Positions 54,076 to 55,004 of a DNA stretch of 64,000 nt are shown one piece after another (position 1 is the first letter of the stretch; each line of letters opens with the position of its first letter). The position numbers were made by a program, and so were the translations under genes. Under the pieces are notes generated by a model. The model made no database searches. It was not told where the DNA came from and worked only from the letters and a program-made list of their open reading frames with translations. The stretch lies in assembly GCA_002269645.1 (NCBI GenBank), contig NIVC01001863.1, positions 124,001 through 188,000 of the forward strand, written 5' to 3'. Source of the DNA: Macrostomum lignano (Eukaryota).

Positions 54076-55004
54076 ATGACTTTCACTGGCAGGTGAGCTT
54101 GCAGACATTTACTAATTGCATTTGAATGTCTGTCTGTCTGTCTGTCTGTCTGTCTGTCTGTCTGTCTGTCTGTCTGTCTGTCTGTCTGTCTGTCTGTCTG
54201 TCTGTCTGTCTGTCTGTCTGTCTGTCTGTCTGTCTGTCTGTCTGTCTGTCTGTCTGTCTGTCTGTCTGTCTGTCTGTTTGTCTGTCTGTCTGTCTGTCTG
54301 TCTGTCTGTCATTCTGTCTGTCTGTCGACCTGTTTCTGTCTGTCTGTCGACCTGTTTCTGTCTGTCTGTCGACCTGTTTCTGTCTGTCTGTCGACCTGTT
54401 TCTGTCTGTCTGTCTGTCTGTCTGTCTGTCTGTCGACCTGTTTCTGTCTGTCTGTCTGTCGACCTGTTTCTGTCTGTCTGTCTGTCGACCTGTTTCTTTC
54501 TGTCTGTCTGTCTGTCTGTCTGTCTGTCTGTCTGTCTGTCTGTCTGTCTGTCTGTCGACCTGTTTCTGTCTGTCTGTCTGTCGACCTGTTTCTGTCTGTC
54601 TGTCTGTCTGTCTGTCTGTCTGTCTGTCTGTCTGTCTGTCTGTCTGTCTGTCTGTCTGTCTTAGTGTCTGTCTGTCTGTCTGTCTGTCTGTCTGTCTGTC
54701 ATTCTGTCTGTCTGTCTGTCGACCTGTTTCTGTCTGTCTGTCTGTCTGTCTGTCTGTCTGTCGACCTGTTTCTGTCTGTCTGTCTGTCTGTCTGTCTGTC
54801 TCTCATTTTCCCAAGCAACCCAACCGCCCCACATCACTCAGAGTGACCCACTTGGCCACATCCCTGGCTCTGGTGCTGCTGCTCATCTGCGCTCTCCACA
54901 CTGAGGCGATCGGGTTGAGGCCCTGGAAGTACGACCGGATTTACAGAGATGAGCCTTCGGACCTCGGCGGACTGCTGTGGGCCCGCTCCTATATTCCCCG
55001 CTGA
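54076..55004 (+). CDS. Candidate 59-aa secreted peptide precursor, join(54076..54092, 54842..55004): MTFTGRVTHLATSLALVLLLICALHTEA / IGLRPWKYDRIYRDEPSDLGGLLWARSYIPR
   Basis: ATG at 54076, donor AG|GTGAGC at 54093, acceptor CACATCACTCAG| at 54841; phase 2 joins in frame. Hydrophobic h-region followed by T-E-A. No family recognised. Confidence 0.65.
54126..54802. repeat. Interrupted (TCTG)n microsatellite filling the peptide-gene intron
   Basis: Read directly; variant units TCGACCTGTTTC and TCTTAGTG. Confidence 0.97.

What the first reader, a model, noticed from the sequence alone, without database searches (positions are those of the whole stretch)
54076..55004. Hidden two-exon gene for a 59-aa secreted peptide, split by a (TCTG)n intron
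Seen: ATG ACT TTC ACT GGC AG|GTGAG...CTCAG|A GTG ACC joins in frame. It gives a basic n-region, the hydrophobic core LATSLALVLLLICAL, a T-E-A cleavage context and a 31-aa mature part IGLRPWKYDRIYRDEPSDLGGLLWARSYIPR with no Cys, several single Arg and two Trp. The ORF track shows it only as the tail of a microsatellite ORF, so pipelines could miss it. Inference: an uncharacterised neuropeptide, seminal-fluid or defence peptide. No dibasic or Gly-amidation site is evident and no family was recognised.
Basis: partly seen in the sequence, partly recalled or inferred. Interest (0 to 1): 0.75.

Follow-up and report, generated by a model that had tools for sequence, protein, structure and literature searches.

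The report
Annotated flatworm secreted-peptide gene, loop-less copy
The two-exon 59-residue secreted-peptide gene is real, but it is already annotated as a hypothetical protein of the flatworm Macrostomum lignano, and it is a derived copy, missing the cleavage site and disulfide loop, of a small species-restricted tandem family of secreted peptide precursors.

Summary
The sequence facts hold. ATG 54076-54092, a GT...AG intron at 54093-54841 that is almost all (TCTG)n, and exon 2 at 54842-55004 join in frame to give the 59-aa peptide.

It is not hidden. The identical protein, over the same 929-bp range, is a GenBank CDS of Macrostomum lignano (BOX15_Mlig028075; PAA63208.1/PAA86130.1). That annotation was built from RNA-seq.

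An exhaustive protein search found relatives only in M. lignano:
- a near-identical copy on another contig (74 aa);
- two diverged paralogues 13 and 23 kb downstream on the same contig.

All share a 17-nt coding exon 1, the phase-2 (TCTG)n intron and a nearly invariant signal peptide ending in T-E-A. All except the window copy then have a spacer, a KK site and a C-terminal aromatic-rich Cys...Cys loop peptide. The window copy lost KK and both Cys through a 45-nt in-frame deletion plus 8 clustered non-synonymous changes.

Silent sites are almost unchanged in the signal region but saturating in the mature region. Whole-CDS pN/pS is about 1-2, which is the conserved-signal, hypervariable-product pattern.

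No Pfam, PDB or literature match was found, and tissue and function remain unknown. Repeat-filled introns are ordinary in this genome. Interest is modest.

The parts
54051..54075 (+). Short 5' leader conserved among the paralogues (…CCTTGGCAACTGAAAGA before the ATG). Similarity between paralogues starts about 25-40 nt upstream of the ATG.
   Evidence: the 120 nt upstream are only 42-57% identical between genes A, B and C, except for the last ~25 nt; the three near-identical copies are aligned.
54076..54092 (+). Coding exon 1: ATG + 14 nt (M T F T G and the first two bases of Arg6). The intron is phase 2.
   Evidence: The same 17-nt exon with a GTGAG donor is present in L002, L003, gene B (L005) and gene C (L004).
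54093..54841 (+). Intron, 749 nt, GTGAG…CACTCAG.
   Evidence: Intron length differs between copies (749, 647 and 591 nt) only through the repeat. The GenBank gene range equals 54076-55004.
54127..54801 (+). (TCTG)n/(TGTC)n microsatellite, about 174 units, with interspersed CGACCTGTTT units. It fills the intron.
   Evidence: The same microsatellite fills the homologous intron of paralogues B and C.
54842..54908 (+). Exon 2, remainder of the signal peptide (residues 6-28: RVTHLATSLALVLLLICALHTEA). The predicted cleavage is after Ala28.
   Evidence: h-region of 15 aa, mean KD 2.78, with T at -3 and A at -1; 16 invariant positions including T26 E27 A28; silent-site divergence of 0-0.04 between paralogues; the only confidently modelled element is helix 3-30.
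54909..55001 (+). 31-residue predicted secreted part, IGLRPWKYDRIYRDEPSDLGGLLWARSYIPR. It is linear, has no Cys and carries a net charge of +2.
   Evidence: AlphaFold2 pLDDT is about 49 over this part.
54975..55001 (+). Derived tail (LWARSYIPR). Relative to the L003 copy it carries a 45-nt in-frame deletion that removes KK and the first Cys. It also carries 8 clustered non-synonymous substitutions, one of which is Cys->Arg at the second Cys.
   Evidence: The tail is identical in L001 and L002 and absent elsewhere in the held sequence.
55002..55004 (+). Stop codon TGA, at the same position as in the L003 copy and in paralogue C.
55005..55103 (+). Probable 3' UTR. It holds a 16-nt tandem duplication at 55029-55059 (2 copies here, 5 in L003) and a poly(A)-signal-like GATAAATACA at 55095-55103. 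The latter aligns with the GATAAATAAA / CATAAATAAA of paralogues C and B.
   Evidence: The poly(A) site itself was not tested.

Best explanation
This is a real, transcribed, already annotated two-exon gene of Macrostomum lignano: BOX15_Mlig028075 on contig NIVC01001863.1, most likely PAA63208.1.

It belongs to a small M. lignano-restricted family of secreted peptide precursors. At least three tandem genes lie within about 25 kb, and there are further near-identical copies on other contigs of this neopolyploid genome.

The family plan is:
- a 28-residue cleavable signal peptide that is nearly invariant, even at silent sites;
- a variable spacer;
- a KK processing site;
- a 21-22-residue C-terminal, aromatic/Trp-rich peptide closed by one disulfide (G-C-x9-11-C).

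Inferred mechanism for the family: co-translational entry into the ER, signal cleavage after T-E-A, cleavage at KK by a prohormone-convertase-type protease, trimming of the C-terminal basic residue (or amidation of the terminal Gly in paralogue C), and secretion of a cyclic peptide.

The window copy has lost KK and both Cys through a 45-nt in-frame deletion plus clustered substitutions. After signal cleavage it would therefore release a 31-residue linear, unstructured, mildly basic peptide.

The evolutionary mode is a conserved signal with a fast-changing product, tandem duplication and no orthologues detectable outside the species. That mode fits an exocrine or interaction peptide (defence, reproductive or pheromone-like) better than a conserved neuropeptide. 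Which of these it is remains inferred, not shown.
For: - Identity and annotation. The exact 59-aa protein is at two M. lignano loci, and the gene range equals the finding.
- Transcript basis of the annotation: PMC5730564, read. The annotation used StringTie/TACO/TBONE on RNA-seq, and only coding 'coregenes' were submitted.
- Family membership: 74-aa copy ending EKKINYHGCKFIRDWGWDCSWINR; P0003, P0004 and P0006, all M. lignano; same contig, same exon 1, same phase-2 (TCTG)n intron.
- Coding constraint: all five indels between paralogues are multiples of 3, and GC3 is 0.75 against flanks of 0.41-0.44 GC.
- Signal peptide.
- Evolutionary mode: the signal region has pS 0-0.04, while the mature region has pS 0.43-0.67 and pN/pS 0.5-0.8. 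Whole-CDS pN/pS is 1-2.
- Derived state of the window copy. Flanks are 99-100% identical, there are 9 non-synonymous and 0 synonymous differences, and 8 of them lie in the last 10 codons.
Against: - I saw no RNA-seq reads, expression pattern or peptide evidence directly. Transcript support is inferred from how the GenBank annotation was made.
- SignalP was not available, so the signal peptide rests on rules and on conservation.
- The window copy lacks the family's hallmark and may be losing function.
- The annotated model of paralogue B splices out its loop through a 56-nt GT-AG mini-intron. The loop may therefore not always be the product.
- Mature loops carry net charges from -2 to +2, which does not fit typical cationic antimicrobial peptides.
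- With only four sequences, the pN/pS values have wide errors.
Confidence: 0.8

Rival explanations
1. The window copy is a decaying, redundant duplicate. It is still transcribed and still open, but it no longer makes a functional product because the KK site and the disulfide loop are gone.
For: - Loss of both family hallmarks.
- The genome is neopolyploid, with 2-3 near-identical copies of the locus (PMC5730564 reports large duplicated fractions).
- AlphaFold2 gives no structure beyond the signal helix.
- There are 9 non-synonymous and 0 synonymous differences from the intact copy.
Against: - The deletion is exactly in frame and the original stop codon is kept.
- The orphaned second Cys has been replaced (TGC->CGC), as expected if a secreted product were still under selection.
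- Two separate loci (L001, L002) keep an identical intact CDS.
- Both loci were retained as coding genes in the RNA-seq-based annotation.
Confidence: 0.25
2. The family encodes a new flatworm neuropeptide or peptide hormone: a signal peptide, a spacer, KK and a C-terminal cyclic peptide, as in somatostatin, allatostatin-C, urotensin II or MCH precursors. The window copy would then be a variant prohormone.
For: - The architecture of the intact members: a KK site directly before a C-terminal disulfide-loop peptide rich in Phe, Trp and Tyr.
- A C-terminal Gly in paralogue C, which is a possible amidation donor.
- C-terminal Arg or Lys in the others.
Against: - No hit to any Pfam neuropeptide family.
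- No relatives outside M. lignano among 1.84 billion representative proteins or in the profile search.
- pN/pS in the putative bioactive loop is 0.5-0.8, and there are tandem paralogues with different loops. That is unlike conserved neuropeptides.
- The window copy lacks the site and the loop altogether.
Confidence: 0.25
3. The ORF is spurious: the transcript is non-coding, or the hydrophobic stretch anchors a tiny membrane protein rather than acting as a cleaved signal.
For: - The product is very short (59 aa).
- There is no domain hit.
- The maximum 19-residue hydropathy of 2.06 would also allow membrane insertion.
Against: - The reading frame, start codon and intron phase are kept in three diverged paralogues, and all indels are in frame.
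- There is a GC3 excess.
- The hydrophobic core is only 15 residues, flanked by His and by an invariant T-E-A with small residues at -3 and -1. This is typical of cleaved signals and short for a membrane span.
Confidence: 0.07

Closest known systems
GenBank gene BOX15_Mlig028075 (g1/g2; PAA63208.1, PAA86130.1; UniProt A0A267ENY8), 'hypothetical protein', Macrostomum lignano assembly Mlig_3_7
   Same: Identical 59-aa sequence and identical 929-bp gene range with the same two exons. This is the finding itself.
   Different: Nothing in sequence. The public record carries no function, family or signal-peptide annotation.
Paralogues in M. lignano: BOX15_Mlig033806g1 (PAA92131.1, 74 aa), BOX15_Mlig003555g1 (PAA63209.1) and BOX15_Mlig028162g1 (PAA63210.1)
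   Same: - The same 17-nt exon 1, the same phase-2 (TCTG)n intron and the same signal peptide ending in T-E-A.
- The 5' leader and the poly(A)-signal region are homologous.
- Mlig003555 and Mlig028162 lie 13 and 23 kb downstream on the same contig.
   Different: They keep a KK site followed by a Cys-loop peptide:
- INYHGCKFIRDWGWDCSWINR;
- INYEGCIFIRNWGYDCSMLDG;
- ASQRGCYWYHVGLFGWHCPPVK in the unspliced frame.

The window copy has LWARSYIPR instead.
Prohormones with a C-terminal disulfide-loop peptide after a dibasic site (somatostatin/cortistatin, allatostatin-C, urotensin II, melanin-concentrating hormone); comparison from my own knowledge
   Same: The intact family members share the overall layout: a signal, a spacer, a dibasic site and a C-terminal cyclic peptide rich in aromatic residues.
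   Different: - There is no sequence similarity: Pfam gave no hit and there is no FWKT-type core.
- The ring has 9-11 residues between the Cys.
- The family evolves fast and is tandemly duplicated.
- The window copy has neither the dibasic site nor the ring.
Secreted-peptide gene superfamilies with a conserved signal and a hypervariable mature peptide (cone-snail conotoxins; frog-skin antimicrobial peptide precursors, some with a C-terminal 'Rana box' loop); comparison from my own knowledge
   Same: - Almost no silent change in the signal-coding part, against saturating change in the mature part.
- Whole-CDS pN/pS at or above 1, and tandem paralogues.
- A basic processing site before the mature peptide, and a C-terminal disulfide loop in the intact members.
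   Different: - There is no sequence relationship.
- The loops are not strongly cationic (-2 to +2).
- The expressing tissue is unknown, and no activity has been tested.

Membership tests
M. lignano Mlig028075/033806/003555/028162 peptide family (defined here) | Conserved signal peptide M-x-x-x-G-R-[LV]-T-x-L-A-T-x-L-A-L-…-T-E-A | tested here: met
   16 invariant positions across four members, including T26 E27 A28. E-values are 1e-10 to 1e-8 against the diverged paralogues and 1e-22 with the profile.
M. lignano Mlig028075/033806/003555/028162 peptide family (defined here) | 17-nt coding exon 1, then a phase-2 GTGAG…CAG intron filled by (TCTG)n | tested here: met
   the same structure is present in the window, L002, L003, gene B and gene C.
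M. lignano Mlig028075/033806/003555/028162 peptide family (defined here) | KK processing site followed by a C-terminal G-C-x9-11-C aromatic loop | tested here: not met
   the window copy lacks KK and both Cys because of a 45-nt deletion plus substitutions. It is a member by descent, but a derived one.
Cleavable N-terminal secretory signal peptide | Positive n-region, a 7-15-residue hydrophobic core, and small uncharged residues at -3 and -1 | tested here: met
   Arg6, a 15-residue core with mean KD 2.78, Thr at -3 and Ala at -1. This is rule-based only, because SignalP was not available.
Neuropeptide / peptide-hormone precursor | Mono- or dibasic convertase sites flanking the bioactive peptide, and often a Gly amidation donor | tested here: not met
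   there is no KK, KR or RR and no Gly-basic motif in the window product. Both are present in the paralogues.
Neuropeptide / peptide-hormone precursor | Conserved mature peptide in other species | tested here: not met
   no relatives outside M. lignano; pN/pS of 0.5-0.8 in the loop between paralogues. Transcriptomes of other Macrostomum species could not be searched.
Neuropeptide / peptide-hormone precursor | Expression in neurons or endocrine cells | not testable with these tools
   No expression data were reachable. Gene-ID searches in papers and supplements were empty.
Somatostatin/urotensin/allatostatin-C type cyclic peptides | Match to the family profile or core motif | tested here: not met
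   no Pfam match for the 59-aa or the 74-aa form at E <= 10, other than two chance-level hits; no PDB relative.
Conserved-signal / hypervariable-mature secreted peptide families (conotoxin- or frog-AMP-like mode of evolution) | Signal region conserved even at silent sites, while the mature region diverges at or near the neutral rate | tested here: met
   pS of 0-0.04 in the signal against 0.43-0.67 in the mature region; intron flanks are 56-84% identical. This describes how the family evolves, not homology to those families.
Cationic amphipathic antimicrobial peptide | Strong net positive charge and an amphipathic helix or hairpin | tested here: inconclusive
   net charge of +2 for the window 31-mer and -2 to +2 for the loops; no confident structure (pLDDT about 49).

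The most novel reading that the evidence does not exclude
The family may be a previously undescribed Macrostomum-specific system of secreted cyclic peptides: KK-released, Trp-rich, with a single disulfide. They would act as signals or weapons between individuals or against microbes or prey.

On this reading the window gene is a naturally occurring linearised variant that has acquired a new activity, and the orphan Cys was removed under selection.

A more remote add-on concerns the (TCTG)n = (CAGA)n intron kept in every paralogue. It could act as a regulatory array, since GTCT/AGAC is the Smad-binding element. Nothing tested here supports that, and the same microsatellite is common elsewhere in the window.
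Probability: 0.25. Interest if true: 0.5.

Novelty: new member of a known kind. Interest (0 to 1): 0.3.

Why it matters
For genome scanning, this case shows that a gene split by a microsatellite intron can look hidden in an ORF list while already being captured by an RNA-seq-based annotation.

Biologically, it adds an orphan, tandemly duplicated, fast-evolving secreted-peptide family to a flatworm used as a model for regeneration and sexual selection. The near-identical copies include one with the KK site and disulfide loop and one without. That gives a ready-made comparison for asking what the cyclic peptide does.

If the family turns out to be seminal-fluid, defence or pheromone peptides, it would interest people studying sexual conflict or innate immunity in Macrostomum. 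It does not bear on a long-standing general question.

Tried and rejected
- Self-similarity: exon 2 is not repeated elsewhere in the window and is not part of the nearby SINE-like repeats.
- Rfam and tRNA scans of the window found nothing.
- Pfam and a PDB sequence search with the family profile gave only chance-level hits.
- P0005, a Babesia MTRAP-like repeat protein, appeared in the exhaustive search but is a low-complexity chance match.
- Full-text literature searches were all empty. I searched for the four gene IDs and eight peptide strings, and searched the supplements of four M. lignano papers. General searches for Macrostomum neuropeptides or gland atlases gave nothing that mentions this family.
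- A donor for the odd LWARSYIPR tail (gene conversion) was sought in the window and in all fetched loci, and none was found. The rest of the genome could not be searched.
- AlphaFold2 with a 3-sequence alignment gave only the signal helix with any confidence (mean pLDDT 63, and about 49 over the mature part). No fold search was run, because it would have been meaningless.
- A first attempt to compare the loci with megablast was swamped by microsatellite hits. It was replaced by targeted alignments.

Full report
**1. The observation**

The sequence is as described.
- ATG ACT TTC ACT GGC AG occupies 54076-54092 and is followed by GTGAG.
- The intron ends ...CACTCAG at 54841, and exon 2 runs 54842-55004.
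- The joined 180-nt CDS translates to MTFTGRVTHLATSLALVLLLICALHTEAIGLRPWKYDRIYRDEPSDLGGLLWARSYIPR*.

Tandem Repeats Finder reports a period-4 TGTC array at 54127-54801, about 174 copies, interrupted by CGACCTGTTT units. It fills most of the 749-nt intron.

By itself, an open tail of about 67 codons is not beyond chance. My estimate is about 0.04 per frame. The case rests on the independent evidence below.

**2. Identity: the gene is not hidden**

A protein search returned one cluster with a 100% identical 59-aa protein named 'hypothetical protein BOX15_Mlig028075g2 [Macrostomum lignano]'.
- The exact sequence is encoded at two loci of assembly GCA_002269645.1. In both, the called gene spans start to stop of the two-exon model.
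- In locus L001 (contig NIVC01001863.1), the gene at 6001-6929 is the window's 54076-54995... that is, 54076-55004, base for base.
- This places the window at about 124001-188000 of that contig.
- Accessions are PAA63208.1 and PAA86130.1, and UniProt A0A267ENY8.

The paper describing this assembly states how the GenBank annotation was made (PMC5730564). It comes from a genome-guided RNA-seq transcriptome built with StringTie, TACO and TBONE. That set was filtered to coding transcripts that do not overlap repeat annotations. The splice junction therefore has transcript support by inference, but I did not see reads.

**3. A family, and what the window copy lacks**

The 90% cluster also holds a 74-aa protein, PAA92131.1 (Mlig033806g1, locus L003).
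- It is identical to the window protein up to ...SDLGGL, apart from one Val/Leu difference.
- It then continues EKKINYHGCKFIRDWGWDCSWINR.

An exhaustive phmmer search of 1.84 billion representatives found only three further real relatives, all from M. lignano.
- P0003 (58 aa): MISNGRLTNLATFLALLLLLIGVFDTEAIGLKPRMKKINYEGCIFIRNWGYDCSMLDG.
- P0004 (78 aa).
- P0006, a chimeric older gene model that contains ...EKKASQRGCYWYHVGLFGWHCPP....

A profile search of 5.8 billion proteins added nothing.

P0004 and P0003 carry the next two accession numbers, PAA63209.1 and PAA63210.1. They lie on the same contig, about 13 kb downstream on the same strand and about 23 kb downstream on the opposite strand. Both are just beyond the window's end.

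All members share these features:
- the 17-nt coding exon 1;
- a GTGAG donor and a phase-2 intron of 590-900 nt made almost wholly of (TCTG)n;
- a CAG acceptor;
- a homologous short 5' leader and poly(A)-signal region.

**4. Evidence that the family is coding and secreted**

- The five indels between members are all multiples of three.
- The window CDS has GC3 of 0.75, against flanks of 0.41-0.44 GC. Neighbouring genes have GC3 of 0.85-0.90.
- Sixteen positions of the first 28 residues are invariant, including T26-E27-A28.
- The hydrophobic core is 15 residues with mean hydropathy 2.8. Thr is at -3 and Ala at -1.
- AlphaFold2 models only this helix with any confidence, and the remaining 31 residues score about 49.

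**5. Mode of evolution**

Nei-Gojobori counts between paralogues give:

| Region | pS | pN/pS |
|---|---|---|
| Signal region | 0-0.04 | not meaningful (pS near zero) |
| KK + loop region | 0.43-0.67 | 0.5-0.8 |
| Whole CDS | not summarised | about 1-2 |

Intron flanks are 56-84% identical between paralogues. The signal-coding stretch is therefore more conserved than neighbouring non-coding DNA, while the product diverges at close to the neutral rate. From my own knowledge, this conserved-signal, hypervariable-product pattern is typical of toxin, host-defence and reproductive peptide families. It is atypical of conserved neuropeptides.

**6. The window copy is derived**

Among the three near-identical copies, the upstream region, intron ends, the rest of exon 2 and the 3' UTR are 99-100% identical. 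The last part of the CDS is the exception.
- It differs from L003 by a 45-nt in-frame gap and 8 substitutions within 10 codons.
- All 8 are non-synonymous. Over the whole CDS there are 9 non-synonymous and 0 synonymous differences.

Because paralogues B and C share KK and the loop with L003, the long form is ancestral. The change removes KK and the first Cys, and converts the second Cys to Arg. The stop codon is unchanged. L001 and L002 carry the same derived tail, and no donor sequence for it exists in what I hold.

Eight changes in 30 nt amid roughly 1% divergence point to one complex mutational event. They could also reflect a short conversion tract from a donor I have not seen, possibly followed by selection against an unpaired Cys. 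I cannot tell which.

**7. Most likely mechanism**

Shown: a gene with a conserved ORF, a signal-like N-terminus, and family membership by descent.

Inferred:
- The signal is cleaved after Ala28, and a 31-residue linear, unstructured peptide with net charge +2 is secreted.
- In the intact relatives, a convertase cuts at KK and releases a 21-22-residue disulfide-closed, aromatic-rich peptide.
- The terminal Arg or Lys is then trimmed, or the terminal Gly of paralogue C is used for amidation.

Function is not shown. I favour an exocrine or interaction role over a neuropeptide role because of section 5. About one chance in four remains that this particular copy is simply decaying.

One caveat applies to the whole family. 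The annotated model of paralogue B removes its loop through a 56-nt GT-AG mini-intron, so loop-less products may also arise by splicing.

**8. The intron**

Tandem arrays cover about 32% of the window, with 34 arrays of at least 200 bp. In the neighbouring DOCK-like gene, seven successive gaps between coding ORFs coincide with tandem arrays. A 71-aa signal-bearing gene next to paralogue C also has an intron filled by a 30-bp minisatellite.

A repeat-filled intron is therefore ordinary in this genome. What is notable is only that the same (TCTG)n has been kept in all paralogues.

**9. Verdict**

- 'Hidden' is refuted.
- 'Secreted peptide' is supported by rules and by conservation.
- No known family matches.
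- The new information is the tandem family and the loop-less state of the window copy.
- Interest is modest.

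Noticed in passing
window 1-64000: About 32% of the window is tandem-repeat arrays, with 34 arrays of at least 200 bp. Units range from 4 to about 60 bp, and many arrays sit exactly between coding ORF pieces. G+C swings from 0.25 (32-34 kb) to 0.72 (50-52 kb).
   Followed up: partly
window 37261-46757 (+): This is a multi-exon DOCK-like gene, with SH3 and DOCK_N hits in the first ORF. Its successive inter-exon gaps are filled by minisatellites at 38186-38568, 39150-40220, 40662-40843, 42151-42449, 43165-43457, 44123-44665 and 45549-46112.
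   Followed up: partly
window 50012-51928 (+): A single-ORF 638-aa Tcf25 homologue (PF04910, E 5e-95, 73% G+C) lies 2.1 kb upstream of the peptide gene. The same Tcf25-peptide gene order is kept at the two other copies (L002, L003).
   Followed up: yes
window 9071-10765 (-); 26679-28278 (+): An MFS_1 transporter ORF of 564 aa lies at 9071-10765. ORFs with a Sec63/Brl domain and a helix-hairpin-helix domain lie at 26679-28278, followed at 28298-30451 by a long Q/S/N-rich repeat ORF.
   Followed up: partly
window 52752-52957, 60293-60496, 60546-60751: Three copies of a repeat of about 205 bp (76-89% identical) are present. One end looks like the reverse complement of a tRNA T-arm (…GGGATCGGGAATCGAACCCCCGACC…), so it is probably a tRNA-derived SINE. 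The copy at 60546-60751 abuts an (AGAC)n array at 60768-60979. ARAGORN calls no intact tRNA.
   Followed up: partly
window 55247-55425 and 21036-21229 (opposite strands); 55461-55818: Another dispersed repeat, about 70% identical between its two copies, lies just downstream of the peptide gene. It is followed by an (AGAC)n array, the complement of the intron's microsatellite.
   Followed up: no
window 54008-54020: There is a clustered difference in the upstream region: GTGAGGTTCAGG in the window against AAAAATTGCATAGG in both L002 and L003, while the surrounding sequence is identical. This is a second example of a small complex replacement between near-identical copies.
   Followed up: no
L005 11115-11170 (paralogue B, outside the window): The GenBank model of paralogue B (P0004) uses a 56-nt GT-AG mini-intron. 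That intron removes exactly the Cys-loop coding part, giving …EKKASQR-VLAQVN. The unspliced frame reads …EKKASQRGCYWYHVGLFGWHCPPVK. An older gene model (P0006) fuses this exon to a DNA-polymerase-like ORF.
   Followed up: partly
L004 2523-3231 (same contig, beyond the window): A neighbouring annotated 71-aa gene starts with a signal-like MFQMLACRLHLILIALACAALLG…. Its intron is filled by a 30-bp minisatellite (2620-3063). It shows no sequence similarity to the family.
   Followed up: no
window 62845-63354 (+): This ORF gives a weak DUF7083 hit (E 7e-6, just below the Pfam cut-off). It could be a remnant of a mobile element.
   Followed up: no
window 55029-55059: A 16-nt unit (GGGCAGTCGTGTTTAC) in the 3' UTR is present twice here and in L002, but five times in the L003 copy.
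   Followed up: yes
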